A stretch of 64,000 bases of DNA from contig NW_003314302.1 of assembly GCF_000143415.4 (NCBI RefSeq), positions 18,065 to 82,064 on the forward strand. The letters run 5' to 3'. Position numbers and translations under genes: made by a program. This DNA is from Selaginella moellendorffii (taxonomy: Eukaryota; Plantae; Lycopodiophyta). Position 1 is the first letter of the stretch. Each line of letters begins with the position of its first letter. The notes under the pieces are model-generated. The model was not told the DNA's origin. It was given only the letters and a program-made list of their open reading frames with translations, and made no database searches. Below are positions 6,296-26,900 of this stretch, in pieces.

Positions 6296-8114
6296 ATGAA
6301 GTGCACAGATGATGGGATCAGAAGGGTCAAAGAAAATTCGAAAGAGGAACTCGTGTTGCGTGTGACGAATATAGATTCAAAGCCTGGTGCTCTGACCAAG
6401 AAGTTCTCTGTCACGGATGACAGAGAAATACTCGAGGCAATTGCATCACACCGAGTTTCAAGTTTAATAGATTCATGTGGTGCCCGTCTGAATTCGTTTG
6501 TAAAATTCCTAGACTACGCGTTCCTTGAGACAAATGGAAAACAGTAAGTGTATTTTCCTTTTGACAGAGCATTTTAAACACCAAAATATTCTGTAGGTCA
6601 TTGATTGTTTCGGATGCATGCTTCCTGGATGGTGGAGTATGGAAGCGCACACGCTCAAACCCTATCCTTCAAGATATGAAAGTGGTAAATCCTTTCTTTG
6701 GTTTTAATTCTAAAATAACTGCTACAATTGAACTTGCCAGGGACAAAAACGAGCCCAGGAGTCCATGGAAAAGGTATTTCACGACTAAACCAGTTTATTC
6801 AATTTGTTCCCTTTGATACAGGGAGAGAGCTCAAAAAAGGCCGTCATAAAAGAGGTGTTCATCAAAGAAATCAGTGACCGTTCTTACAGGTGGTCCTTCC
6901 GTGCAAGAGTCACACACAAGAACAAGTTGATACATTTCAACACGAAAAGATCTGGATGCATAATGTCATTTGACGTTGTCGATGTCCAGGGAACAGAGAT
7001 TAGAATTATTGGCTCCGACGATTGTGCCTTGGTTTTGTCAGATAAGATTGTACAGGGTATAGTGTATTCATTTTCTGGTAGTGGTGGAATACGACGTTCC
7101 AATCAGGCATACACACCATTTGAAGTGACATGGGAGATTCAGGCTAACAAAGGTATGGAGTTTACAGCTTTGGATGAGGATGCAACGTTCCCAAGAATTG
7201 TCTTGGCAAAAACAAGCATATTAAGTGCGTGTCAGAAGGAAAGGGACTCTTTTGTCGATGTGGTTGGTATTGTAATATGGATCGGTACAATTACAGTAAC
7301 ATCTCGTGACAGTGGAACTTTTGTGAAGAAGAGAACATTGTGTCTAGGTGATGATTCAGGCCACAGTGTTGATCTATGTCTCTGGGATTTAAAAGCAGAA
7401 GAAGAGGGCTCATATATACAGGAGCGGATAGACAGTGGAGTTCAGCCAATAATATGTGTCAAGGGTGGAAAGGTATCGGACTACAATGGTAAATCACTTT
7501 CAGCAATTGGTGTGAGCACCATTCTTATTGAACCGGAAATGGAAGCAGTGGCTGATTTGAGAGAATGGATGACATTGTACTACAATGTCACTAACTTCAT
7601 ACATTTGAGCACTTCATCATCCAGACAGACTGTTAGCTGCACCACTACTTTATCAGAGATATCAAACATGCAGTTAAAGGTGTTAGAGAGTTCCCCTATC
7701 TATAGAGTGATAGCTACTGTGAAGGAAATGAAGACAGATGAGTTTTACTATAATGCATGCATCAATGTCGTGAATGCACGGCAATGTGGCAAAAAAACTA
7801 CCCGAACAGCAGATGGTTGGTTCTGCAGTTATTGCAATATTGAGTCTGCCAACATGGAGTTCAAGTATGCTCTAAAGATGTGCATCGAGGATAGCAGTCA
7901 TGTGTGGGCCATTGCATTTCAAGAGGCTGCACAGGAAATAGTGGGAATGTCAGCAAAGGAACTAGCTACAATGCGAGATGAGAACTACCCTGCATTCTCA
8001 CTACTTATCGATGGTATCCGCTCAAAGATTTACAAATTCAAAATCTGGAGCAAGCTTGAAAAATACCAAGACATGGAGAAGCTAAGGTTCTATATACTTG
8101 GACTTGACACCTAA
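6296..8114 (+). CDS. RPA70/RPA1-like ssDNA-binding protein (Helitron-associated type), ~553 aa
   Basis: Exons 6296-6543, 6597-6684, 6741-6773 and 6822-8114 join in frame with GT-AG introns. OB-fold motifs WSFRARVTHK, VDVVGIV, L.DDSG.SV.L.LW and KVSDYNGKSLS are present, plus the C4 zinc ribbon YYNAC...QCGKK...WFCSYC. Confidence 0.88.
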
Positions 8115-8885
8115 GGTATGCAGATTCCATTCTAATCTTTTACATGTTGATATATTTATCTGTGTTTTGTTTTGTAGTTACATGGAACTTGCAAAAACAA
8201 ATAAAATAAAACACACCTCCTAGCAAACATCAGCTCTGTTTGATGGTTATCTGTAGCAAGAAAGGAATGTCAAGATACAAAAACTAAAAAAGGGAAAGAA
8301 CAACAAAAAATGATTCTCAAGTGGACAATAAATGACAAATGCATCAACTGTATCAGAATTTAGCATGTTATAATGAACAAACACATAGTCCACCAGAAAA
8401 TACAGTCATTTATACTTCAATACACATCACTTGCTTGCAGATGCAAAACCAGCAATTCTATACCAAAAATCCCTTTACCATACCATCCCATTAACTGCTC
8501 TTACCTCTGGAATGCCCAAATAATATACCAAATTGAGGAATATGATTGAGCCACCTCTTCATGTGTTGAATAATTCTTTTAAGCTTTGAGTCCAAGCTTG
8601 TATTATTCTATTCCAGTTAAACATTTAAGAAATAGTGTTTGGTTGCAATCACTAAGTAAAAACTAAATAAACCAAGTGCTTGTTACATATTGAACTTAAG
8701 TAAGTTTTAATAAATTGTTCTCTTTTTAGAATTAACATCTAACTATCCCAGCGGAGCTGGGTTCCCTGCTAGTAGTATCTACCATAAGTAAAATTGAATA
8801 TTCTAAAAATGGAATATGTGACACCGATGCCAAAATAGCAACTTTAAATAAAGAGTTTGATGATGATAGTCACATTCAGAATAAC

Positions 8886-8959
8886 TGGCCTATGCAGGTC
8901 TCGAACCTGCGACCTTGGCGTTATTAGCACCACGCTCTGACCAACTGAGCTAATAGGCC
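8886..8959 (-). tRNA. trnI-AAT: tRNA-Ile (anticodon AAT)
   Basis: Reverse complement is GGCCTATTAGCTCAGTTGGTCAGAGCGTGGTGCTAATAACGCCAAGGTCGCAGGTTCGAGACCTGCATAGGCCA: full cloverleaf with A and B boxes. Confidence 0.97.
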
Positions 8960-9461
8960 TTAGGCATTGATTAAACTCCTGTAATGTGGCATCTAAGTTT
9001 TTTCTAGAGTTAAAAAAATGAACGCTAGCTCCATTGTCTCTCCTCTTTTCGTGTTTGTGCCCTCCAGTCAATCGCTCAATCCTGAAACTCTGGCTGATTA
9101 GCTGTGCAAACAAAAGCGAATATTGAAAGAATGTTTCCTTCCAGCATTTTGACCGCTGAACAACAGATGCTGCACCAACTAATCAAACGTCCCAAAACCA
9201 TAATGGACATTACATTTTACCTTGAATGAGGGGAATGCACAATTATGTAATTAATCTTTTGCTTGATTTTGTTTATTAAAATGTTTTCTCCCCAATTATA
9301 ATTTAAGTCTGATGTAAATTTCTCCATGAAACAATGGGTTTGGCCGAAAAGGCTTTCATTCAATTAACCTTGATCTTTTCTTGAGTGGCGGCGGGCCACG
9401 TGGAAAAGTCTTAAAATTATTGATGTTGGTGTGACCTTGAGTTGTGCTGCAGGAGGCGACT

Positions 9462-10732
9462 ATGGCGGATTCTCAATACAAGCACATCCTTGTATTTTCA
9501 CATCCACTGCTTGGCCACGTAATTCCCATGCTCCTCATCAACCAGGACTGCTTGGAGTCGGTGACCAAGATCCACGAAGAGCTTGTAAGCAAAGGAGACT
9601 TCTCCAAAGAGGTTGGATCACATCAAGGCCATGTTTGAGGCTTGGCAAAACTCAGGCAAGCTTGCCGAGCAAGCCGGACAGAGCTCTCGAATCCAATCGC
9701 GTTCCAATCTCGTTTGTGCTGGCCGACTTTACGCTGAAGCGGAGCCAAGCTGTCGCGGACAAGCTCAAAGTTCCCAGAATTGCTTTGGCGATAATTGGTT
9801 CCCAGGAGCTTGCTTCATCTCTCAGGGTATTTACAATCCTCTCTCAGGTAAGAACTTCCAGGTTCTCGTCAAGAACTTCACTTTGATCCTTCTTTAGAGA
9901 TCGAGGACGACGATTTGGACAAGGCGATCGATCTCCGAGGGCCGAGGCTTTCCAAAGTTGAAGGTCTCCGACTGTCTTCCACGCATCTCACAGTTTCCAC
10001 TGGAAGCTCTCCTGCAGGCCATGGAGGTGGCAAAGATGGCCAAGATTCCTCCTTGTAAACTCTTGCTAGGAGCTGGAGGGCGAGGCATACAAATCCACGC
10101 TCGAAACACACAAGCTTTCAATCCATTTCGCGGGGCCGCTGCTTGCCTCGCCGGTGCTGGGATTGGATCACTACTGTTTGCAGTGGCTAGACACCACGCT
10201 CGGTGCTCTTCGCCTCGTTCGGATCCCACCTATAGTTTCCAGCGTCCGAGCTCGAGAATATCCTCCTGGGCATCGAAACCAGCGGGAAGAAATTCCTACT
10301 AGCCTTCCCGGACGGATGCAATTGCGGGCGATTTCTCTCCATGGCTGCTCTCCTTCTTCGATCGATACAAGAGCGACTCAAGTGATCTCGAGCACCGGCA
10401 GGGATTGATCGTTCCATGGGCTCCACAGCGAGCGGTTCTATTGCACCCATCCATTGGTGGGTAGTTTTTCACTCACTATGGATGGAATTCCATGCTAGAG
10501 AGCATCGCTGGAGGTGTTCCAGTGATTGGAGAAGCCAATCCTTGGAGATCAGTTTGGAGTGAGGAGGCTTGCATTGGATTGCTGGAGAATTGGATTCGAG
10601 ATTGAGGAGGACAAGAACAAGATCTTGAGCAAGGACGCCGTAGAAAGAGCAGTTAACGGCTTGTTTGGCAGTCAGCATCTTTATGTTAATGCCGCAGAGC
10701 TCAAACAATCACTAGAAAAGGTAGTCCAGTAG
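9462..10732 (+). pseudogene. UDP-glycosyltransferase (family 1) pseudogene
   Basis: N-terminus HILVFSHPLLGHVIPML. PSPG box [36 protein letters not shown] contains an in-frame TAG and frameshifts before KPILGDQF. Several further frameshifts. Confidence 0.85.
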
Positions 10733-10836
10733 TGCCCAGATTAATAAGGATTTCAAACATCTATAACAATAATGAATGTTTTGGCCCGGCTGGTTTTACA
10801 AATTAGAATGTTTATAAACAAGTGAAGCTTGACGGC

Positions 10837-13326
10837 TTAAATACGAGTCGAATCTCTTCCAAAAACAAACCGCTTTGTCCAATCGAAAAGAACAACAAAT
10901 CTAGTCCTCCAGCTGACTTGCTTGCTGTTTTCCACAAATTTCACACGAGAAAGAATGAGAAACGAGAAGATTTCGGGTGCGTAGGAAACGAAGTACCTGA
11001 GATACACCGAGTACCAAAGCCACATACTGCTTCGACCGATTGAAACCCAATCCCCTGGCAACTCCGCCGCTGCTTCTTCGCCACCAAGAGGTGCAAACAT
11101 CCCGAAATGCTTGTATCTGTTGTAAGGCGCGCGCGCGCGCGCGAGGAAGAGAGGGTGAGTCTAAAACAAAACGAAACAAGGAGAACTGTGGTACCTGAAT
11201 GGCTGAAATCTGTGACGCCCAGACGCTCGGACGCGAACTGGTCCCTCCGGGTGCTCCTCGCAGTAATCCATGTCGTTGAAACAGCGCGCCAAGTAAGTCC
11301 CTTGTTGTGCTGCAACCTGTGCATATACCACGATTCAACTCTTGGAAAAGCACAAAGAAAGAAAAACACAAATTGGTACCTGAGCAGTGGCGGGAAGGAG
11401 TTTTGTCTCGGAATCGACTTGAGCAAGTGCCTGCTTAAACTTCTCAATGTCGAGCTCCACTTCAGATTCCTGACCGAGCTGCTTTGCCTCGTGCAGTAGG
11501 CTCATAGTGTTGGCGAGGTGGTGGCTCTTGAGGTACATATCTATTTGAGGATATCTTCCCCTTATGGTTTCCATTGCTTCTTTGAACTCCTTTAGTGACA
11601 GGATGCCGTTTTGATCTTTGTCAGCCAGTTTAAATATGTACGTTATGTCTTCCTGCAAAGCTCACAAGGTAGTTTCAGCAAACGCCTTAGCGAAGAAACA
11701 AAACTTAAAGCATCATACCATGATCTTTCGCTGCTCAATGGTAGCACAGTCTCCTACTGCAACACTCCTTCGCAACCTCTTACTCTAAGCCACTCGTCGG
11801 TAGCCAAAACCCGCCTGTTCTTCTGTAAATTTATCAAAATGCAACAACAATCAAACCGGCGAAGAATTAAAACTTCTTATACCTGTCCAACTTGCTCCAT
11901 AAACTTCCTGATCAATGGTCGTGTTCCAATCCCCGTCGACCAAACAGCCAAGCTGAAAGGAATCATAACAGTTTGTCCGGATTTCTTTTCACTCGTCTCT
12001 ACTTCATTTTCCTTTACTGCATTAACGTGGCAGTTTGTTTGAACGTTTATTCCATCTCGTTTAAACTTGTCTTCCGCATATTTACTAATGCGTTCATCGA
12101 ACCTGTCGCAAGGTAGACAATAAAGGAGTTAAAGATGCAACATCAACAGAATGCAAAGAACTTACATGTTTAGTATGTGATCTCCCGACTGTATCAGAGT
12201 TATAGAGACTGCATCACGAGTAACAGGGTAAAGGTCCACCAAATCCTCGTACACAAGGTCATACAACTCCGCTGCAAACTCCACGCCAGTCGGGCCCCCT
12301 CCAACAACAACAAAGTTGAGCCGCGCTCGACGCTCGGCGTCCGACAGAGTGGGAATGCTGGCACTTTCAAAGCAATCCACCACGTTTTGATGTATTCTCT
12401 CGGCATCCTCAACCTCCTGCAAAGTATTTGAAGCGTCAATTCCAAAAACTATCCAGGTCCATACCTTCAAGAAATGGCAGTTCTCGGCAACTCCAGGCGT
12501 CCCAAAGGTGTTCGTCTGGCAGCCCACCGCAATGACCAGATAGTCGTAGTCTATCTTAAACTCAACGTGAGGCCTCGGCGGTTTCGTTTCAGCACAATCT
12601 ACGCACGTTACAGTCTTTGTGACGTGGTCGATGTTCGTGCATTCTGCTTCACAATACATAACATTTCGGTGTGCCTGTACGTAACGCAGCCAAGAAGAAA
12701 ATGATAAGGCCAAGAAAAAAGAAAAGAAACATAAGAAACAAGGCCAGTATACTCACAACTATTCTTCGAACAGGCTCCGTAATGCTCCGTGGTTCCAAAG
12801 TTCCAGCAGTGACGCTAGGCAGCAAGGGCGTGAAAACAAAATAGTTCCTGGGCGAGATGACAACCACGTCGTATTGCTTGTCATCCAAATCTTTCAAGAG
12901 ACTGACACCTGCCCAGCCAGTGCCAAGTATCACGATCTTCTTCTTTTTACCAGTACTTTTGTCTTGAGCCACAGCCAGCGGCGGATTCCACACATCGTCA
13001 CTGATCGCAATCGCAAGGCCTACAGCACTGGCAAGAAAATCCTTGTGAGACTTCTAAAATGAAGCACACAGAGGGAGAGATAGATCTTACCTTACTGCGA
13101 CGAGCGCCGCGGCAGCAAAACTCCACGATCTATGGCGCTCCTGCTGCCAGTACGATCTAAGCCTACTGCCGTGCAATAATCCTCGATCGGCGCCCGAGCA
13201 GAAAGATCGAATGCGATGCGAATTCTCTGCTACAAGATACCAAGGCGGCGAGTAACTTCCCGATCCAGCCCTACTCCATGTCCTGGAATGCAATGCCGAG
13301 CGCTGGAGGCGTCGTAGCGCGCGCAT
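10837..13326 (-). CDS. NDB: External alternative NAD(P)H:ubiquinone oxidoreductase, NDB type with EF-hand (multi-exon)
   Basis: KKIVILGTGWAG, SPRNYFVFTPLLPSVT.GT.E, VVVGGGPTGVEFAAEL, EF-hand ADKDQNGILSLKEF and C-terminal WTKRFVFGRDSTRI*. Confidence 0.93.
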
Positions 13327-13460
13327 TGTGGACCAGACTCCTCACATTCCCATCGTCAATGCCAAGAGCCCTAAATAAACCTAGCCTGACTAGATCTTAC
13401 ATCGACGGTGGAACTTATGCCCGCGAAGCACTAGCATATTCTACGAATATTTACAAACTT

Positions 13461-14831
13461 TTAAAGCTTGCCCATTTGGGCGGTATTGAAGTAGAAGTGG
13501 GAGAGTTTTCGCTGGAAGCCCGTGCTCATCGCTCGCGAGCCAAAGCCACTGTATTGTTTCTCTTTGCTCGCGATGCAAACTTCCAGGATCTTCTTGAGCA
13601 TGCTCCGGCTCTGGAAGAAATCCTGGGCTCCAAATTCTGACAATGACATCCACTGCAGATCGATCACTTATGTTAGATCATTTCTTTCTGGAGTAGAGAT
13701 TTATGATCTTACCTTGGCATCCTCGATTTCCGAGTCTTGCTTGGTTATCTCCGACGAGAGAGGTCTAAGAACGCACACGAAGAACAAGTCCGACTTCTCG
13801 AAGGCTACGTGATGACCCTGCCTAAAACCCACGACTTCTACGAACTCCGTGTCGATCTGGAAGATTTGTCAGGAAATACCAAAGAAAAAGCCGTGTCATT
13901 CACGAGTATGACTGTAATTTCAAAGCATTACCCCAGTTTCTTCTTTGACTTCTCGTATAGCACCCGCAAAAATGTCCTCGGCCTGTAATTAAACAAGACG
14001 GAAAACGTTTACTTTCTAATAGAGACCAAAAGACTAGTTTTCTACACCTGGTTGATCAATCCTGTAGGCATTTTCCAAATCCCTGTGCCTTTCAGCGGTC
14101 CATTTTTCTCCTGGACCGCGAGAACCTGCGAGAACACCGATGAGTATTGCTGACCCTTTCTAAAAAGGCGAGTTCTTACCTCGTCTCTGTCGTTCACGAC
14201 GAATGCTCCAATTCCAACTTGGTGTGAGGCATTCGCTGGCAGCGTGCAGGGAGAATCGGCAAGCCAGTGCGTGAGCATCAAATACGTTGGCTCCGCATGG
14301 TGGTATCTAAATCCTGCCTGTCCAGCCTCTAAGAAAAAATAGAACAATGTTTAAGAAGCAAAAGTACCTCAATCGCGTGTGGAACGAGAATGGATTTCTC
14401 TATGGGCAACTTGAGCCAAACACCTCTTTTTTGCTGAAAAATTCAAGCGTGAGATAGCTAGACAAACACTAAACAAAGAATGTAAACCAGACCTTCTCTC
14501 GCCAAGATGCAAGAGACCTCTCCAATCGATAAACGAAAGTTGGAACATCGGCTGGTAGGCTGTCGGGATCAACGATGACTCCATTGTACCTATCCTCGTG
14601 GACGCGAAAAACAATGGAGTCGGACGATCCTTGGTTTGATTTCAAGACGTCGTCCTGTGTGGAAACCTCGTCTTCGATCGGCAGAGGCGCCACTCCCAGA
14701 GAAGAATGCTCCGCGAGCGGCATTGCCGAGCTCGTCACACACAGCGTCCGATGCGTGCTCTCTTTCGGTGCTGTGTGACGCGTTCTTGGAAGCAACACTC
14801 GATTCGCTGCAAGATTTCGCCATCGATTCAA
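13461..14831 (-). CDS. Nudix hydrolase, plant NUDT2/NUDT8-like subfamily, with likely organellar transit peptide
   Basis: EDRYNGVIV, GVWLKLP, GFRYHHAEPTYLMLTHWL, LPANASHQVGIGAFVVND, WKMPTG and AIREVKEETG (Nudix box). Confidence 0.9.
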
Positions 14832-15220
14832 TCAGGAACAAGAAATTCACGAGAATCGGGCAATATTTCAGGAGAAACGATCCGGAGAACGATATCGAGA
14901 TAGAGATTTCTACCTGGAGGCGAGCTGACGATGGCGAACAGCGCGATGCGCGATAGATCTAATCGAGAGGGAGGCCGCGCTCCGCTCACCAGCATCATCC
15001 AAGACGCATTGCGCTCTAGCCCTCCCCAACGAGGGTTTTAAAAAAGCACGTTCTAGTACTTGACAAAAGGCATGATACTCGTGCTTATAAATTCGAATCT
15101 TTTGTACGCCTCTTTGTGAAGCATGACAAAGATATAGCGACCTCTTCTACTCAATTTCTAGCACAAGAACACAATCTCTCGGGAGTAAATTCATCACAGG
15201 GATATAGACACCATTGTCAG

Positions 15221-17342
15221 TTAGCTTTCGCTGGAGATTTGCGAAAATCCAAATCCAGCAAACGTTTCCTGTCAAGGCAAGATAAACACTCTTGAGCGAA
15301 CAGTGAACAAAACAGGGAATGCTGCTTACATTCTCATCGATGATCCCGTAAGCAACACAGTAGTGCTCCTGCAGTGGAATTGAGAAACTAGAATTCACAG
15401 GAGAAAAACTCTTTTACCTGCATGATATGCCATTCCTCAAACTCGTCAAAGATCTCCAGCCTCTCGATCCTGACAAAACGAAAAGCTCAAAGTTGGAAGC
15501 GCATAAAAAACTGAAAAACAGTGAGTTGATTACCTTCTCCTCTCGACAGGATCGATGTGACGATTGTAGATTTCGTCCATATCCACCGCCACTGCCCTCT
15601 GTCGGCGTTGAAAGAATTATTTAGTACTTCACAATTGGAACAAGGACGATTCACCTTCCATCCTGTTTCTAAGAACCGGTTCATCTTGGACTCGAGCGTA
15701 GATGTATCGTGAATTCCCAGTAAAGGACATCCACGGCTCTATGAATGTAAGATAGTTCATCAGTGAAAACGTTGCATCTCAGAACAAAGTTTTACCTCGA
15801 GATTTCGTATCATTTGTTGCCCAAAGGCGTCCTCTCCATGGATCTGTGGCTGAATTAGACGACGCAAAAACTGATAGCAAAGAGCTCACTTGTTCATATG
15901 CTACAAATACTGCATTTGAGAACTTGCTCGCGGCCCATCTTAAAAGTGCACGACTAGCCTCTGGATCCATGTATATCAAAACACATTCCGCAAGAATCAG
16001 GGTCGGTAGACTGCAGTTAAAAAAAAAAAAGACGTCAGCACGAGAAACAAGGCTCATCTTTGGGTCGAGAGAATTACCTTAAGTCCAAGTTCGCCTTTTC
16101 GCAGACAGCATCCAGCCTTGCGGTGTCTGTTAGATCACAAGCAAAGAGCTTGTAGTGCTCACTGCTTATTTCCCCTTTTTCTGCAATCCTATCCATTCAA
16201 TCGTAAACAAGATAAGAAAAAAAACCTGGCACAAAGTCAGCACAGAAACGCACCGGGGGCGAAGACTGGCGAATCAAGGTGTCTTGCCGTCTCTTTGCAC
16301 GCCGCAACGATCATAGCCTTTTTACTTGTCACCTCCAAGAAATCCACCTCCATAAAAACATCTGGAGCATTTTCTTCCTCCTGTTAATAGCGTGAGCTGA
16401 ACTTTCATAGCAATGAAAAAAAGCTCACCTTGAGTTGAAAGAACGTTGTATCAAAACCAGCTCCCAGAGAAACTATCTGCTTCCTTTTCGAACTGGGTTG
16501 AGAAAGGAACTGCATCAAGAGCGCCCGTATAGCAGCCCATCGAGCAAAGTATCCTGAAGAACAAAGTTATTGAAAATCGCAAAGAACCATCATACGCATA
16601 CCTCTGTTGATCAAGGGTGACCTCTTAACAGGTCTTCTCACGAAATACTGAACGTAGTTGTCTGTCATGTAGCCTTTCCTTACACAGGATCTAAAGTTGA
16701 ATCAAGTTAGCTCAGAAGGAACAGATAGTGGCTCTCATACGATTGAAACTTCAGCATCAAAAACTCAGCATAGCGTATACACAAACAAATCATAGAGCCA
16801 GAATGCTATCATCAGGTACAGGTTCACTCGCATTCATGGCCAGGCCATGTAGGAAGGTGTCCTAAGATGCTATTTTCTGTATCATCACTTGATAAAAAGG
16901 GGCTAATGCCGATGAAATGCTCGTCAGCTCAGGTCTCCAAAGTTTTCTACACGCTCTCTCGAGCGATCAGTAGAAAGCATCAAAAGGTTTTCATCAATCG
17001 AGCCTTATAAGAAAATGAAGAAGCTTTTCTCTGATTCAGAATTGCAGAAAGCCATCACAGACAAATCAGTCCAAGTGTTGGATGTGAAATCTGATTCATC
17101 ATCATCATCTCAAACAAGAAAGGAAAATCCACTCTTTCACTCTTCAGCACCAAATCTCTTCTCTACAAACACCATTCTGGTGTTCAGTAGAACGAAAGTT
17201 GTAGATTTTGATGCTCATCACGAGAGAAAATGACAGGGGGAGGGAGAGAGAAGAGATTTACTCACAGCTTGCTCGCGGAGGCATCGTCATTGGTCGCCTG
17301 GACCGCTGCGCGGCTACTGCTCGCGCGAGGAGGAGCCGCCAT
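15221..17342 (-). CDS. LCMT1: Leucine carboxyl methyltransferase 1 (PP2A methyltransferase)
   Basis: AVQATNDDASASKL, SCVRKGY, RRSPLINRGYFAR, QIVSLGAGFDTTFF, PTLILAECVLIYM, DAFGQQM and EHYCVAYG. The last exon reads ETFAGFGFSQISSES*. Confidence 0.92.
16701..16893 (-). ncRNA. Atypical long (~190 nt) box C/D RNA candidate
   Basis: C box GTGATGA (16888-16882), terminal D CTGA (16715-16712), flanking 7-bp inverted repeat ATCAAGT/ACTTGAT, 15-nt complement to 25S AGGTGTCCTAAGATG (16855-16869) and an internal hairpin. Confidence 0.6.
16919..17004 (-). ncRNA. Box C/D snoRNA, U55-like (25S guide)
   Basis: C box TTGATGA (16997-16991), D' CTGA (16970-16967), D CTGA (16932-16929) and terminal stem GCTCG/CGAGC. 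The D guide ACTTTGGAGAC pairs with 25S GTCTCCAAGGT with one G.U. Confidence 0.8.
17031..17110 (-). ncRNA. Box C/D snoRNA, dual guide (5.8S and 25S)
   Basis: C box ATGATGA, D' CTGA (17069-17066), C'-like TGATGG and D CTGA (17039-17036). The D guide pairs with 5.8S AATTGCAGAA and the D' guide with 25S CCAAGTGTTGGAT. Confidence 0.85.
17140..17225 (-). ncRNA. Box C/D snoRNA, U59/snR54-like (18S guide)
   Basis: C box GTGATGA (17221-17215), D' CTGA (17187-17184) and D CTGA (17147-17144). The D' guide is complementary to 18S AGAACGAAAGTTG (13 nt). Confidence 0.85.
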
Positions 17343-17564
17343 GGAGCACAAGCCCTAACCAAAAACCCTAGCTCAATCCTAGTTTAATACTATTATCTTA
17401 TCGATTAGAAGGAAATTTGGAAATAGAATAGGCTGCACAGAAATCATGATCCAGGGGAAATTATCATAGCTAGCTAGGGTTCTTCGCAACATTCGCTACT
17501 CGATCGCCGTGGCTAGCAGCTCAGCTTAGCGATTAGCTCTTGCATTGAGTGCGATCCAGCGGCG
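17343..17564. promoter_or_regulatory. Short bidirectional promoter LCMT1/IBR3 with telo-box-like motifs
   Basis: Head-to-head ATGs are 222 bp apart. AAACCCTAG at ~17363 and CTAGGGTT at ~17474. Confidence 0.6.
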
Positions 17565-20500
17565 ATGGCGTCGATGACATCCGACATGATCGAATCGGTG
17601 CAAGAAGCTCACAGATTGGATGAGATTTCGTTGCTGGATTATCTCCACCGATCTGTGGAAGGATTTCCACCGCGGCCGGTGAAGCTCACAGTCTCCCAGG
17701 TAAAAATCACTGAATTTCTTCTTCCTGGTGTGGTGATCGTTTTTTTAGTTTGGACACGGGCAATCCAATCCTACTTATCGGTTAAAAGCCGAGGGTGGCA
17801 ATGCTGTGAAGTTCTATGTTCTTCGCAAAAAGCCTCCTGGGAAATTGCTCCAGTCGGCACACGCTGTGGAGCGCGAATACCAGGTGCCTGTTCATAGCTA
17901 GTTCATGGTTTCTATCTTTGATTTTCTCTTCGTCTCGAAGGTTTTGGCTGCTCTTGGAAAAGAAGGAACTGTGCCAGTTCCCAGAGTTTTTTGCCTTTGC
18001 AACGATCCGAGTGTCATTGGCACGCCATTCTACGTTATGGACTATGTCGAAGGCCGCGTTTTCCTTGATCCTGGACTGAAGGTAAAATCTATATCTTGGA
18101 CTGACTACCACTTCGTGTTGGATCATCCAGAGCGTCAAGCCTGAAGAACGAAAGGAAGTTTACCAGGCCATGGGCAAAACGCTTGCTGCTATTCACAAAG
18201 TTGACGTCGATCGTGTCGGCTTGGGAAAGTTTGGGCGTCGCGAAAACTACTGTAAGCGACAGGTATGGCTTTGGTTTTGTTCTTCGTCGTTCCAATTCGA
18301 AATTTCTACTCGTCATGTAGATTGAGAGGTGGGCATCGCAATATGCTGCGTCCACGGCTGAAGGAAAGCCACCCGCGGAACCTTCCATGCTGAAACTTAC
18401 AATGTGGCTGAGAAGTAACGTGCCAGCTGAGGATGCTCGGAGAGACTGTGCGGGAATAGTTCACGGCGATTATAAAATCGACAATCTAGTTTTCCATCCA
18501 ACTGAGGTTTGTTCATCACTCTGTTTTATGTTCGTCGTTCATCGTGAATACTTCAGGCCCGCGTCCTGGCGGTTTTAGACTGGGAACTTTCGACTCTCGG
18601 AAACAGAATGTCCGATGTTGCTTATAATTGTATGGTACGTTTTTGCTGATTGTTACTAGTTGGATCACTGAAAAAATCGGTGCAGCAGCCATATGTTATA
18701 GACAACGGCAAGAGCGGCGGTCCGGGCTACTATGGCTTTGACAAAGGGGCTCCCTCCGATGGTCTACCCACACAAGAGGAGTTTGTTGCTACCTATTGTG
18801 CCCAAGGAGTAAGTCATATCTTTGTTTTGTTTTGGTCTAATGGTTGTTTAAAACTCAGGGAGCATCATGGCCTGGGCCTAACTGGAAGTTTTATCTAGCT
18901 TTGTCTCTTTTCAGGCTTGCTGCAATTTCTGCAGGCGTGTATAATCGGTTTTTGCTTGTGAGTTCTTTCAAATTTGTTTCAAAAAACCGACTTCGGGTTG
19001 ATTATTGTTGAAGGGAAATGCTTCGGGAGGGAAACGTGCAGAATCTAGTGGCAAGTTTGCTTGTTATCTAGCGTCATGTGCACTTCAGTTGATCAATGGT
19101 GGACCTATTATTTCTGATGTTCCACCTTCATTTGCGAAAATTGGTTAGTCGTCTTTTCTATTTCTTACTTCCTATCTTCTTAAGAGCCTGTTTTTGTATG
19201 ACAGGGAACAAGCATCCAGGTCTGTCTCCGTCGTCCAGAGTTTTACGGCTTAAAGAACAACTTGCGACTTTCATGGAAAAATACATTTACCCAAACGAGG
19301 AACTTCTATCCGCTCATGCGAAGACGGAAAAGAGGTGGACAGTCCACCCGCTGCAAGAAGAGCTAAAACATCGTGCTCAAGCCGAGGGCCTTTGGAATCT
19401 GTGGATCCCAGTAAGTGTGGCGTTTTTTATTTTCCTTTGCAATGTTTCTTACGGATTTTCCAGGCCGACAGTGCAGCAATGGCCTCCAAAATCTTGTTTG
19501 ACACGGACGACGCTCAAAACTTTGACAGGCTAGTTGGCGCGGGCCTCAGCAACCTCGAGTATGGACACCTCTGCGAAATAATGGGACGCTCGGTATGGGC
19601 TCCTGAAGTCTTCAATTGCAGCGCTCCCGACACTGGGAATATGGAGGTGACTAGCAATCTTAAATTCCAACAGAGAGAAACGTGACCGAGGTTTTTGCAG
19701 GTTTTGTTACGATACGGCAGTCCAGAGCAGCAAAAGGCATGGCTAAAACCTCTTCTCAAGGGAGAAATACGGTCAGCTTTTGCCATGACGGAGCCTAATG
19801 TTGCTTCTTCGGACGCGACGAATATCGAGTGCAAAATAACAAGGTTCTTTTTCTGAAGTTGCATGTTTTGTTTTATACTTGAACCATTAAACTCCAGGGA
19901 TGGAGAACATTATATCATCAATGGACGAAAGTGGTGGACAAGCGGAGCTATGGATCCTAGATGTCGCATTTTGATAGTCATGGTTAGTACGACCTTCATT
20001 TTGGTAGTCTTAAGTTTTCTGTGCTTTCTTCTGTTAACAGGGAAAGACTGATGTCAATGCGCCCTTGCACAAACAACAGTCTATGATCCTCGTTGACATC
20101 AAAACTCCTGGCGTAGAAATCATACGACCGCTAACTGTCTTTGGCTACGACGATGCCCCGCATGGACATGCCGAGGTGCTTTTCAAAGACGTGAAAGTTC
20201 CTGCGACGAACATCCTATGGGCCGAAGGACGTGGTTTCGAGATTGCCCAAGTATTGATTCCTTCTAAGAAGTTTATTCATGTCTAAAAACATTTATCCTC
20301 GCAGGGAAGACTTGGGCCGGGACGACTCCACCATTGCATGCGCTTGATCGGATCCGCTGAGCGAGCTTTGGAGCTGATGGTTCACAGAGCATTGCAACGA
20401 AAGGTGTTTGGAAAGCTCATTGCTCAACAAGGAGCGTTCTCTTCGGAGGTTTCCCAGGTAAGCTTTTCACGTCGTTTTTTTCCAGACTGAGCTCTCTTGT

Positions 20501-23978: not shown

Positions 23979-26900
23979 ATGGCGCTGGCAGCTGCCTTGG
24001 AGGCGGATTTGCGAGCTCTCTCGGCGGAAGCTCGACGCAAGTACCCGGCAGTGAAGGATGCAGCTGAGCACGCAATTCTTAAGGTGAGTGATGGCAAATT
24101 CTTGCGTTTGATCCGTGCGTATGCGATATTTCCAGCTGCGAACGATCACTGATCCCAGCCAAATCTCTCGAAACGATGATGTTCTCCGGCTCTACATGCT
24201 TGCCTGTGATACCAGGAACGTCAAGCTCAGCATTTTGGGACTCTCGTGCCTACAAAAGCTCTTGGCTCACGACGCGGTACCTCCTTTGGCGTTCCCACAA
24301 ATTCTTGAGACCTTGCAAGAGGTAGATTGGCCGTTTTTCATTCCTTTAGTGTAGTTCTAACGAGACGTTTGTGTTTTTTATTTCTCTTCTTCTTCTTTTG
24401 CCTTTGCAGCATTGTGAGATAAATGATGAAATTCTCCAGCTGAAAACTTTGCAAACAATTCTCACTATCCTTCAATCGAAGCTCCATCCAGGAGACGAGG
24501 TAAGTACGTATCCTCCTGTTTAACTTACAGTTTTTGCTTTGCTTTTGTAGAATAGTATGTCAATCCTTCTTGGTCTTTGCCTCGGCTTACTTGGTAAGAG
24601 TCGCAATCCTGATTCCGTCCAAAGGTAAGCGTGAGACTCTCTCAGTCGTAACCGAAGTGTTTTTTTTCACTCTTTCTCAGTACTGCGGCTGCGACTCTAC
24701 GTCAGGCTATAGCACTGATATTTGAACGTGTGGTTTATGCGGAAGATTTGCCTGCGCAGAAGGGTACGTCAAGCAGGCGGCCATCACGCTCGAACTCGGT
24801 TTCCGGAGATGTTAGTCGCAGCATGATGACAGCCAAGTAAGTACCTCAAATCTAGTTTGCTCACATAATGGAAGGAATGAACGCGTACTATCCACAATAA
24901 CGTAGGACTGAGGAAACTGCTCCTGGTTCCAGCTCGGAATCCAGAGTTTTTATGACGCAAGAAGGCCGGCTTGGGCTCAAGCTTTTTGAAGATCTAACGT
25001 CACTTGCGGCTGGTGGCCAGGTAGTGCTTTTGTTTTATACTGAACTTTATAAGAGATTGACTGGTGTCTTTTTTTACTCCAGGCAAAGTGGCTTTCTTTT
25101 CACTCCCTTCAACGAACATTCGCTTTTGACATGCTTGAGTGAGTATGATTGTTTTATTTAAATTGAGATTTTAACCAATTTGTCCCTCCTCAGCTATGTT
25201 CTTTCCAACTACATCTCGCTTTTCAAAAATATCCGACCCTATCAAGAGGTGGGATTTTCTGTTGTCAAACACGCAATTAATTGAAATTCTGCAGGTTCTT
25301 CGCAACCAAGTCTGCTCATTGCTAGCTACGTCTTTGAGAACGACAACAGGGGTTAGTGTTTCTATTGAAGTCCAAATGTTTTGACACTTGAATTGTAGGC
25401 TGAAGGTGAACCGCACTTTCGGCGAATCATATTGAGAGCTGTTGCTAATGTCATTAGACTATACAGTTCAATTGTGTTGGCGGAATGTGAGGTGCACTTC
25501 AATTGCCTTGGTTGTCTTCGTGTTGATTTTAAACTCGCAGGTTTTTGTGAGCTTTCTTGTGAAGAGTACGGATGCAAGTTTACCGTCATGGCATCGAATT
25601 ATGGTGCTTGAGATCTTACGTGTATGTCTCGCATTTGATTTTCTTTCACAATAACAGTCTGTCTCCTTTTTTTTTCTTCTTCTTTTTTGAGCAGGGGTTT
25701 TGCATTGAAGCAAGAATTTTGTGCTTTCTCTTCGAAACTTTTGATATGTACGTAGATTTCTTACTTCCTTACTGTTGTTTAACACTTCTTTGTGCAGGCA
25801 GCCTGAAAACTCGAATGTTGTTGGGGCCATGGTGAAGGCGCTATCGCGCATTGTCATCAGCATGCAGGTTTGTTATGCAGGCGCCTCTTATATGAATAAC
25901 GTTTCCATTTGCAATAGGCACATGATAACGAAGAAAGCTGGGCTGCCGTGTCGGGTATGTTCAACAGCAAAGCTAAAGGTAATGCGGTGTGACTTTCAAA
26001 TTTATGTCTAATTTGTTTTACATTAGGTGTTGAGTGGTCTTTGGATAACGATGTGAGTGGAGCTGCTATAGCAATTGTCAGTGAAGCGCATGCGATCACT
26101 TTAGCTGTCGAAGGTCTTCTAGGAGTTGTTTTTACGGTAGCCACGCTGACGGATGAAGCATCGGAGTCAGGAGAGGTACAAATTGCTGAGTTCTTAAATA
26201 CTTTATCGCATGTTGTTTCAGGTTGCCAGTCCAAGATGTGAAAATCCAAACTCTTCTGTTATAGTAATACGTGGAGGTCCATATGCGACGCTCTGCATTG
26301 CAATGGTGAACGCACTGTGGCGTACGCTTCTAGAAGCTCTATCCCTGGTTCTTTCTAGGTCTGTTTCATTGCTCTATTGAGGCAAGCTTCTACTTATTTC
26401 TGCTAATAATTATCAGGTGCCAGGGAGAGGCTTTAGTGCTGGAAATTTTAAAGGCCTACCAAGCGTTTACGCAGGTTTGAAATCAGTTGGCCATTGCATT
26501 TTTTGGACTTCACTTTTCCTAGGCATGTGGAGTGCTTCGCATCGTTGAACCTCGAGATGCTTTCCTTTCTTCTCTATGCAAGTTCACTATCGCACAACCA
26601 GTTGAACTAGAAAAAGCTACGAGGTAATGGATGGGTGGCTGCAGGCACAACGCAAATTGATTGGTTCTTGCTATGTGTTTATTAGTGGAGGACATCTCAT
26701 TCCGTTGATTCCTCTGACACCCGCTGCCTTAAAACGCTCCGAACCACCTGCAGAACCGCGAGAGAGTGTAGTTTTGACACCGAAAAACGTCCAAGTAAGT
26801 TTCTAAGTTCCTGGCCTCCGCCACGATTCCTAACGCTTTTTGCAGGCTTTGAGAACGCTTTTTAATGTCGCGCATCGGCTTGACAATGTTCTTGATTCGT

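What the first reader, a model, noticed from the sequence alone, without database searches (positions are those of the whole stretch)
16691..17265. Polycistronic box C/D snoRNA cluster hidden in intron 1 of LCMT1
This intron is 575 bp, about 10 times the neighbouring introns, and is tiled by four C...D units on the host strand. By the D+5 rule the guides target 18S AAGA(Am)CGAAAG (U59/snR54 site), 5.8S AAUU(Gm)CAG, 25S CCA(Am)GUG and 25S GUCU(Cm)CAAG (U55 site). Intronic polycistrons are known in some plants. A PP2A methyltransferase host and this guide combination are unexpected and probably unannotated.
Basis: partly seen in the sequence, partly recalled or inferred. Interest (0 to 1): 0.75.

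Follow-up and report, generated by a model that had tools for sequence, protein, structure and literature searches.

The report
Five-snoRNA cluster in spikemoss LCMT1 intron
The unusually long first intron of the spikemoss (Selaginella moellendorffii) LCMT1 gene holds five, not four, tandem box C/D guide RNAs aimed at six rRNA methylation sites already known from Arabidopsis; this is a real but ordinary kind of plant snoRNA cluster, sitting in a host gene that six other land plants do not use.

Summary
Intron 1 (window 16691-17265, minus strand, 575 nt) of the annotated S. moellendorffii LCMT1 homologue is about ten times longer than the other ten introns (46-73 nt). It is tiled on the host strand by box C/D units.

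Rfam finds five units, not four: snR54/U59-like, snoR31/SNORD96-like, Z159/U59-like, RF00353 (snoR10-type guide) and U54. Only U54 passes its gathering score. All five have C and D boxes and a terminal stem.

Six guides place the fifth nucleotide upstream of D or D' on positions that RiboMeth-seq maps as methylated in Arabidopsis: 18S A978, 18S G599, 5.8S G79, and 25S G1855, U2651 and A2912.

The "U55-site Cm" reading uses a CUGA that is part of the guide. The D box next to the terminal stem gives the snoR59 site (G1855) instead.

Units 1 and 3 look like a duplicated and subfunctionalised snoR59.

The same intron position exists in Marchantia, Ceratodon, Diphasiastrum, maize, grapevine and Turnera, but none of them carries snoRNAs there. 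The hosting therefore looks specific to the Selaginella lineage.

Verdict: a new member of a known kind, of modest interest. The scan earlier noted other intron-1 snoRNAs in this genome, in NHP2 and ALG3.

The parts
16691..17265 (-). Intron 1 of the LCMT1 homologue (575 nt, GT..AG), host of the cluster
   Evidence: The exon junction ...ASKL|SCVRKGY matches NCBI protein P0307.
17140..17226 (-). Unit 1, snR54/U59/snoR59-type. C box 17220-17215, D' 17187-17184, D 17147-17144, 4-bp stem CUCU/AGAG. The D' guide (17201-17188) targets 18S Am (Arabidopsis A978). The D guide is decayed.
   Evidence: Rfam RF00473 33.4 bits, E 0.016 in 951 nt. 13-bp Watson-Crick duplex with SSU of L036, 2/300 shuffles. 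Site mapping. Fold z -3.3.
17030..17108 (-). Unit 2, snoR31 / SNORD96-like. C box 17101-17096, D' 17069-17066, C' 17057-17052, D 17039-17036. The D' guide targets 25S Am (Arabidopsis A2912). The D guide targets 5.8S Gm (Arabidopsis G79).
   Evidence: RF01288 30.8 bits and RF00055 26.4 bits. 10-bp duplex with 5.8S. The 25S site lies next to the A loop and has one mismatch in the algal proxy.
16918..17004 (-). Unit 3, Z159/U59/snoR59-type. C box 16996-16991, D' 16970-16967, D 16927-16924, 5-bp stem GCUCG/CGAGC. The D guide (16943-16928) targets 25S Gm (Arabidopsis G1855). The CTGA at 16932-16929 is part of the guide. The D' guide is decayed.
   Evidence: RF00160 33.8 bits, E 2e-4. 15-bp duplex (14 Watson-Crick plus 1 GU) with LSU, 0/300 shuffles. 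Mapping.
16805..16896 (-). Unit 4, RF00353 (snoR31_Z110_Z27) with a snoR10-type guide. C box 16887-16882, degenerate D' CCUA 16853-16850, D 16815-16812, 5-bp stem UAUCA/UGAUA. The D' guide (16869-16854) targets 25S Um (Arabidopsis U2651).
   Evidence: RF00353 31.7 bits. 15-bp perfect duplex with LSU, 0/300 shuffles. Mapping to U2651.
16730..16799 (-). Unit 5, U54. Variant C box AUGAUUU 16793-16787, D' 16768-16765, C' 16759-16754, variant D box AUGA 16738-16735, 5-bp stem GGCUC/GAGCC. The D' guide targets 18S Gm (Arabidopsis G599).
   Evidence: RF00206 43.3 bits, above the gathering score of 40. 11-bp duplex with SSU. Mapping.
17266..17342 (-). Exon 1 of LCMT1 (ATG 17342-17340; 26 codons)
16600..16690 (-). 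Exon 2 of LCMT1
17363..17370 (+). Telo box AAACCCTA, 21 nt upstream of the host ATG, in the 225-bp bidirectional intergenic region
   Evidence: There are 10 telo boxes in the window on both strands, so roughly a 3-4% chance of one falling here. No site II motif lies nearby. Motif association as described in PMC3022908.

Best explanation
Intron 1 of the S. moellendorffii LCMT1 gene is a polycistronic host for five box C/D snoRNAs. They are transcribed with the host pre-mRNA by RNA polymerase II and released from the intron or pre-mRNA by endonucleolytic and exonucleolytic trimming down to the snoRNP-protected C/D cores. Assembled with fibrillarin, NOP56/58 and the 15.5K/L7Ae protein, they guide 2'-O-methylation of six conserved rRNA positions. 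In Arabidopsis numbering these are 18S A978 (unit 1), 25S A2912 and 5.8S G79 (unit 2), 25S G1855 (unit 3), 25S U2651 (unit 4) and 18S G599 (unit 5). Units 1 and 3 are paralogues descended from a double-guide snoR59/Z159-type RNA, and each has kept one working guide. The cluster was gained in the Selaginella lineage, inside an intron whose position is shared by all land plants examined. What is shown: the sequence anatomy, the family matches, the guide complementarity, the coincidence with mapped Nm sites, and the absence of the cluster from orthologous introns. What is inferred: expression, the processing route and the actual methylation in Selaginella.
For: There are five full-length Rfam C/D matches, tiled on the host strand only. 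Motif enrichment beats 2000 of 2000 shuffles and is unique within the window. Every unit has a terminal stem and boxes. Guide duplexes of 10-15 bp form with eukaryotic rRNA (L036, annotated by Rfam), and three of them are reached by at most 2 of 300 shuffles. All six predicted nucleotides fall on Arabidopsis RiboMeth-seq sites (PMC8053127 Table 1). The mapping was checked by the base identity of neighbouring Nm sites: 22 of 23 agree. The host gene and splice junction are confirmed by NCBI protein P0307 and 100% identity to GL377606.1. PDB LCMT1 matches one exon at E 3e-13. The unit 1 / unit 3 alignment has z 3.1, and both units match the same Rfam clan.
Against: Four of the five units score below their Rfam gathering thresholds. 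No expression or methylation data for Selaginella were available. Selaginella's own rRNA was not available, so a green-algal metagenome rDNA served as proxy, and in it the unit 2 D' guide has one mismatch. The 5.8S duplex is only 10 bp (45/300 shuffles). Unit 4 has a degenerate D' box (CCUA) and unit 2 a 3-bp terminal stem. Four guide regions (unit 1 D, unit 3 D', unit 4 D, unit 5 D) have no rRNA target.
Confidence: 0.9

Rival explanations
1. One reading: four units, with unit 3 using the first CUGA (16932-16929) as its D box and guiding the U55-site Cm (Arabidopsis 25S C1860) instead of G1855.
For: An 11-bp duplex also fits that register. C1860 is a genuine Nm site in Arabidopsis, 5 nt from G1855. 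A weak SNORD55/39 Rfam match of 22.3 bits exists.
Against: The first CUGA pairs with UCAG of the rRNA inside a 15-bp duplex. The terminal stem abuts the second CUGA. The plant Z159 consensus has the same double CUGA with the stem after the second. Arabidopsis SnoR59 is assigned 18S A978 plus 25S G1855. Units 4 and 5 clearly exist.
Confidence: 0.08
2. The cluster has its own promoter and is transcribed as an independent polycistron, as most Arabidopsis clusters are. It merely overlaps the intron, and processing does not depend on LCMT1 transcription.
For: Independent polycistrons are the commonest plant arrangement (PMC3022908). The cluster is absent from orthologous introns, so it arrived from elsewhere.
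Against: Unit 1 starts only about 40 nt after the 5' splice site, leaving no room for a promoter inside the intron. The only telo box lies upstream of the host ATG. All units are on the host strand.
Confidence: 0.1
3. The units are decaying relics (pseudo-snoRNAs) that are no longer expressed or functional, and active copies lie elsewhere in the genome.
For: Four units fall below Rfam gathering scores. Four guide regions have no target. The D' box of unit 4 is degenerate.
Against: All C and D boxes and terminal stems are intact. Six guides keep 10-15 bp of uninterrupted complementarity at exactly the known sites. Decay is confined to complementary halves of the unit 1 / unit 3 pair, which is the pattern expected of subfunctionalisation and not of random decay.
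Confidence: 0.05
4. The motifs are a chance clustering of short C and D box strings in a T-rich intron.
For: None beyond the shortness of the motifs.
Against: 0 of 2000 shuffles reach the counts. The strand asymmetry is 7/11 against 0/2. There are five full-length covariance-model matches. Six of six targets fall on known Nm sites.
Confidence: 0.005

Closest known systems
Rice intronic snoRNA gene clusters (Liang et al. 2002, Chen et al. 2003, as summarised in PMC3022908)
   Same: Several heterologous box C/D snoRNAs lie in one intron of a protein-coding gene, on the host strand, with a telo box in the host promoter. Non-ribosomal host genes occur there as well.
   Different: The host (LCMT1) and the composition differ. 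In rice, snoR31 and snoR10 sit in the snoR29-30-31-10-77Y-U49-snoR2-U14 cluster, U54 forms its own intronic cluster, and U59 sits with snoR41Y. The species here is a lycophyte with 50-nt introns.
Arabidopsis SnoR59 / Rfam snoZ159-U59 (RF00160), yeast snR54 (RF00473), human SNORD59
   Same: The conserved guide for the 18S AAGAA*CGAAAG site is present. The plant form carries a second guide for 25S G1855 and an internal D'/C' stem.
   Different: Here the two guides are split between two paralogous units, 1 and 3. Each unit has lost the other guide, and both score below the gathering thresholds.
Arabidopsis SnoR31 (RF01288) and human SNORD96 (RF00055)
   Same: The unit 2 D' guide equals the snoR31 guide for 25S A2912. 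The unit 2 D guide equals the SNORD96-type guide for the 5.8S Gm site.
   Different: The two guides are combined in a single RNA. In Arabidopsis, 5.8S G79 is guided by SnoR39BY and SnoR31's second target is U2 snRNA A31.
U54 / SNORD54 (RF00206) and Arabidopsis SnoR10 / RF00353
   Same: Unit 5 passes the U54 gathering score and shares that family's unusual C and D box variants. Unit 4 has the RF00353 guide aimed at the U2651 site that Arabidopsis assigns to SnoR10.
   Different: Unit 4 scores 31.7 against a gathering score of 45, and its D' box is CCUA.

Membership tests
Box C/D snoRNA (general) | C box (RUGAUGA) near the 5' end and D box (CUGA) near the 3' end, brought together by a terminal stem; length about 70-100 nt | tested here: met
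   All five units meet it. Unit 5 uses the U54-family variants AUGAUUU and AUGA. Stems are 3-5 bp.
Box C/D snoRNA (general) | Guide of at least 10 nt complementary to rRNA, ending next to D or D', with the fifth nucleotide on a methylated position | tested here: met
   Six guides form 10-15 bp duplexes. All six positions coincide with Arabidopsis Nm sites. Selaginella's own rRNA was not available.
Box C/D snoRNA (general) | Stable expressed RNA bound by fibrillarin and NOP56/58 | not testable with these tools
   No expression data could be reached.
U54 (RF00206) | Covariance-model score at or above the gathering threshold | tested here: met
   43.3 bits against 40.
snoZ159/U59 (RF00160) and snR54 (RF00473), clan CL00065 | Score at or above the gathering threshold | tested here: not met
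   Unit 3 scores 33.8 against 39 and unit 1 scores 33.4 against 50. The guide elements and internal stem are conserved, so these units work like the family and are probably divergent members.
snoR31 (RF01288) / SNORD96 (RF00055) | Score at or above the gathering threshold | tested here: not met
   30.8 against 44 and 26.4 against 43. Each family's guide is conserved in one half of unit 2.
snoR31_Z110_Z27 (RF00353) | Score at or above the gathering threshold | tested here: not met
   31.7 against 45. The 17-nt guide block is conserved with the consensus.
Plant intronic polycistronic snoRNA cluster | Two or more snoRNA genes within one spliceosomal intron of a protein-coding gene, on the host strand | tested here: met
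   Five units lie between the GT at 17265 and the AG at 16691 of an annotated gene.
Plant intronic polycistronic snoRNA cluster | Co-transcription with the host and processing from the intron | not testable with these tools
   Inferred only from position, strand and the lack of room for a promoter.
LCMT1 (host gene; PF04072 LCM) | Sequence match to the LCM domain and to solved LCMT1 structures | tested here: met
   Exon-level Pfam hits. Human LCMT1 3o7w matches at E 3e-13. NCBI names it 'leucine carboxyl methyltransferase 1 homolog'.

The most novel reading that the evidence does not exclude
Unit 3 carries two CUGA motifs exactly 5 nt apart. Its single 15-bp guide spans two rRNA positions, also 5 nt apart, that are both methylated in Arabidopsis (25S G1855 and C1860). 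One RNA could use either CUGA as its D box and so specify both marks, which would replace a separate U55/snoR15-type guide in the compact Selaginella genome.
Probability: 0.08. Interest if true: 0.55.

Novelty: new member of a known kind. Interest (0 to 1): 0.33.

Why it matters
This adds a well-supported five-gene snoRNA cluster to a lycophyte genome. Only one of the five units (U54) would pass routine Rfam annotation.

Intronic polycistronic snoRNA organisation was described mainly in rice. This locus places it in an early-diverging vascular plant.

The locus also gives three concrete evolutionary cases:
- A whole cluster was gained inside an ancient, otherwise short intron. It is absent at the same intron in a liverwort, a moss, a clubmoss and three angiosperms.
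- A double-guide snoRNA (snoR59) was duplicated and split into two single-guide copies.
- Guides are combined differently from Arabidopsis, with the 25S A2912 and 5.8S G79 guides in one RNA.

None of this changes the understanding of how snoRNAs work.

Tried and rejected
- Papers not held: the rice and Arabidopsis cluster papers (PMC156054, PMC1370220, PMC135747) are not in the library. I used the supplement of PMC3022908 instead.
- Literature searches: queries for snoRNA with Selaginella or LCMT1 gave nothing relevant.
- First homologue search: the search with an angiosperm query listed only angiosperms. A second search with a Mesotaenium fragment was needed to reach non-seed plants.
- Loci I could not fetch: Ceratopteris, Sphagnum and the shorter Diphasiastrum isoform were not on record, and the Adiantum gene was too long.
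- An initial mapping of the unit 4 target to Arabidopsis G2620 failed the neighbour-site test and was replaced by U2651.
- A guess from memory that the unit 2 D' site was the U29 site (A2947) was rejected in favour of A2912.
- Guide regions with no significant rRNA match: unit 1 D, unit 3 D', unit 4 D and unit 5 D. snRNA and tRNA targets could not be tested.
- A 13-nt rRNA complement on the antisense strand of Vitis intron 1 has no C box and was treated as chance.
- Joined step left out: the spliced LCMT1 model was searched exon by exon by reference only. The full-length protein used later is NCBI's own model, returned by a search.

Full report
**Where the window comes from, and the host gene**

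Window 12221-20342 is 100% identical to S. moellendorffii scaffold GL377606.1 (GCA_000143415.2). The gene on the minus strand is annotated by NCBI as "leucine carboxyl methyltransferase 1 homolog" (P0307, 325 aa).

I first checked the host exon by exon, by reference:
- Two exons hit Pfam LCM.
- One exon matches human LCMT1 (3o7w) at E 3e-13.
- Exon 2 matches the N-terminal part of LCMT1 weakly.

The full-length protein used later is the database's own.

Mapping P0307 on the locus gives 12 exons. The ATG is at 17342-17340. Intron 1 runs from 17265 (GTGAGT) to 16691 (TTTAG) and is 575 nt long. The other ten introns are 46-73 nt.

**Is the tiling real?**

- The sense strand of the intron holds 7 TGATGA and 11 CTGA; the antisense strand holds 0 and 2.
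- Shuffles give means of 0.21 and 2.06, and none of 2000 reaches the observed counts. No other 600-nt stretch of the 64-kb window comes near.
- Rfam at gathering thresholds finds U54 at 16799-16730 (43.3 bits against 40).
- A focused scan of 951 nt adds four more full-length, non-overlapping box C/D matches, all on the host strand:
  - snR54 at 17225-17142 (33.4 bits)
  - snoR31 (30.8 bits) and SNORD96 (26.4 bits) at 17108-17030
  - snoZ159/U59 at 17004-16918 (33.8 bits, E 2e-4)
  - snoR31_Z110_Z27 at 16896-16805 (31.7 bits)

There are thus five units, not four. The spacers before units 1 to 5 are 40, 33, 25, 21 and 5 nt, and the tail to the 3' splice site is 39 nt. Every unit has C and D boxes flanked by a 3-5 bp terminal stem. 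Unit 5 has the box variants typical of the U54 family.

**Guides and targets**

No rRNA lies in the window, so I fetched eukaryotic rDNA from metagenome contigs using a 5.8S pattern. One of these contigs comes from a gut-metagenome assembly but carries green-plant-type rDNA; I took none of them for human. L036 holds a complete 18S-5.8S-LSU unit, apparently from a green alga rich in group I introns, and I used it as a proxy.

| Unit and guide | Duplex with L036 rRNA | Shuffles reaching it |
|---|---|---|
| Unit 1 D' | 13 bp Watson-Crick with SSU | 2/300 |
| Unit 2 D | 10 bp with 5.8S | 45/300 |
| Unit 3 D | 15 bp (one GU) with LSU | 0/300 |
| Unit 4 D' (box CCUA) | 15 bp perfect with LSU | 0/300 |
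| Unit 5 D' | 11 bp with SSU | 34/300 |

The unit 2 D' guide matches the stretch just upstream of the LSU A loop, with one mismatch in the alga. The Rfam snoR31 consensus carries the same base as Selaginella there. I therefore infer that land-plant 25S has the complementary U, but I could not test this.

I mapped the positions to Arabidopsis numbering by requiring that neighbouring RiboMeth-seq sites (Table 1 of PMC8053127) fall on the right bases in L036. This agreed for 22 of 23 neighbours. The fifth-nucleotide rule then gives:

| Guide | Predicted site (Arabidopsis numbering) | Arabidopsis guide |
|---|---|---|
| Unit 1 D' | 18S A978 | SnoR59 |
| Unit 2 D' | 25S A2912 | SnoR31 |
| Unit 2 D | 5.8S G79 | SnoR39BY |
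| Unit 3 D | 25S G1855 | SnoR59 |
| Unit 4 D' | 25S U2651 | SnoR10 |
| Unit 5 D' | 18S G599 | U54 |

About 2% of rRNA positions are methylated. Six hits out of six is therefore strong evidence of function.

Unit 3 has two CTGA motifs five bases apart. The first (16932-16929) pairs with UCAG of the rRNA inside the 15-bp duplex. The second (16927-16924) abuts the 5-bp terminal stem, as in the plant Z159 consensus.

The canonical reading is therefore Gm at the G1855 equivalent, not Cm at the U55 site. The C1860 equivalent lies exactly five nucleotides away and is also methylated in Arabidopsis. A dual use of the two motifs cannot be excluded, but I consider it unlikely.

**Evolution**

Units 1 and 3 both match clan CL00065. 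They share the D'/C' internal stem and align better than any other pair (z 3.1, 2/300 shuffles). Arabidopsis SnoR59 carries both guides, for 18S A978 and 25S G1855. Here unit 1 keeps only the first and unit 3 only the second. The decayed halves are still faintly recognisable: the unit 1 D guide gives an 11-bp duplex with three GU pairs at the G1855 region. This is the pattern of duplication followed by subfunctionalisation.

The composition of the cluster differs from the rice clusters that hold the same families.

The intron position (ASKL|SC) is conserved across land plants. I obtained orthologous loci through an exon query to the representative library, two word searches and contig look-ups.

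| Species | Intron 1 length |
|---|---|
| Turnera | about 112 nt |
| Marchantia | about 122 nt |
| Diphasiastrum | about 269 nt |
| Maize | about 711 nt |
| Ceratodon | about 826 nt |
| Grapevine | about 3.6 kb |

None of these shows C or D box enrichment, any of the six guide cores, or an Rfam snoRNA hit. The large Rfam scans are insensitive below about 33 bits, so the motif and guide-core scans and the focused Diphasiastrum scan carry most of the weight. The most parsimonious reading is a gain in the Selaginella lineage after its split from Lycopodiales.

**Mechanism and expression (inferred)**

Unit 1 begins about 40 nt after the 5' splice site, which leaves no room for an internal promoter. 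A telo box lies 21 nt upstream of the host ATG, in a 225-bp bidirectional intergenic region. This motif is typical of plant snoRNA hosts and ribosome-biogenesis genes (PMC3022908). It is a weak signal here, with roughly a 3-4% chance expectation and no site II partner.

Co-transcription with LCMT1, followed by nuclease trimming to the snoRNP cores, is the likeliest route. No expression data were available.

**Novelty**

Intronic polycistronic clusters, including ones in non-ribosomal host genes, are well known in rice. All five RNAs belong to known families, or work like them. The host, the species, the split snoR59 pair and the guide combination in unit 2 are new details. I found no literature on them.

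Earlier notes of this scan report other intron-1 snoRNAs in this genome, in NHP2 and ALG3. I did not test those; they suggest this arrangement is common in Selaginella.

Verdict: real, partly re-interpreted, a new member of a known kind, of modest interest.

Noticed in passing
window 8886-8959 (-): A tRNA gene (Rfam tRNA, 66.8 bits). The anticodon loop reads CUAAUAA, so it is probably tRNA-Ile(AAU).
   Followed up: no
window 17566 onward (+); L077 1-2778: The divergent neighbour of LCMT1 encodes an APH plus acyl-CoA dehydrogenase fusion protein (811 aa, IBR3/ACAD10-like). It shares the 225-bp intergenic region that holds the telo box.
   Followed up: partly
window about 13461-14998 (-); L077 5345-6882: A NUDIX hydrolase gene (355 aa) lies about 220 nt downstream of LCMT1, which illustrates the very compact gene spacing.
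   Followed up: no
L036 and L034 (metagenome contigs Ga0194130_10006354 and Ga0209442_1002515): These are green-alga-like rDNA units packed with group I introns: at least 7 Rfam hits in L036 and 9 in L034. L036 also has a linked 5S gene downstream of the LSU.
   Followed up: no
L080 (Diphasiastrum complanatum CM055114.1): The LCMT1 orthologue spans 51 kb, against 2.1 kb in Selaginella. A Ty3-type integrase/chromodomain ORF sits inside one of its introns (25691-26317).
   Followed up: no
window 16816-16827 (-), D-guide region of unit 4: The reverse complement of this guide stretch (GCAGGTTCAC) occurs in 49 of the 73 fetched rDNA loci, but on the strand opposite to their 5.8S match. The guide is therefore same-sense with the rDNA there, not complementary. 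No target was found for this guide.
   Followed up: partly
L076 (Vitis vinifera QGNW01001722.1) 6525-11966: The grapevine LCMT1 gene is annotated as two separate gene models (138 aa and 182 aa), and exon 1 lies a further 3.6 kb upstream. This is probably an annotation split.
   Followed up: no
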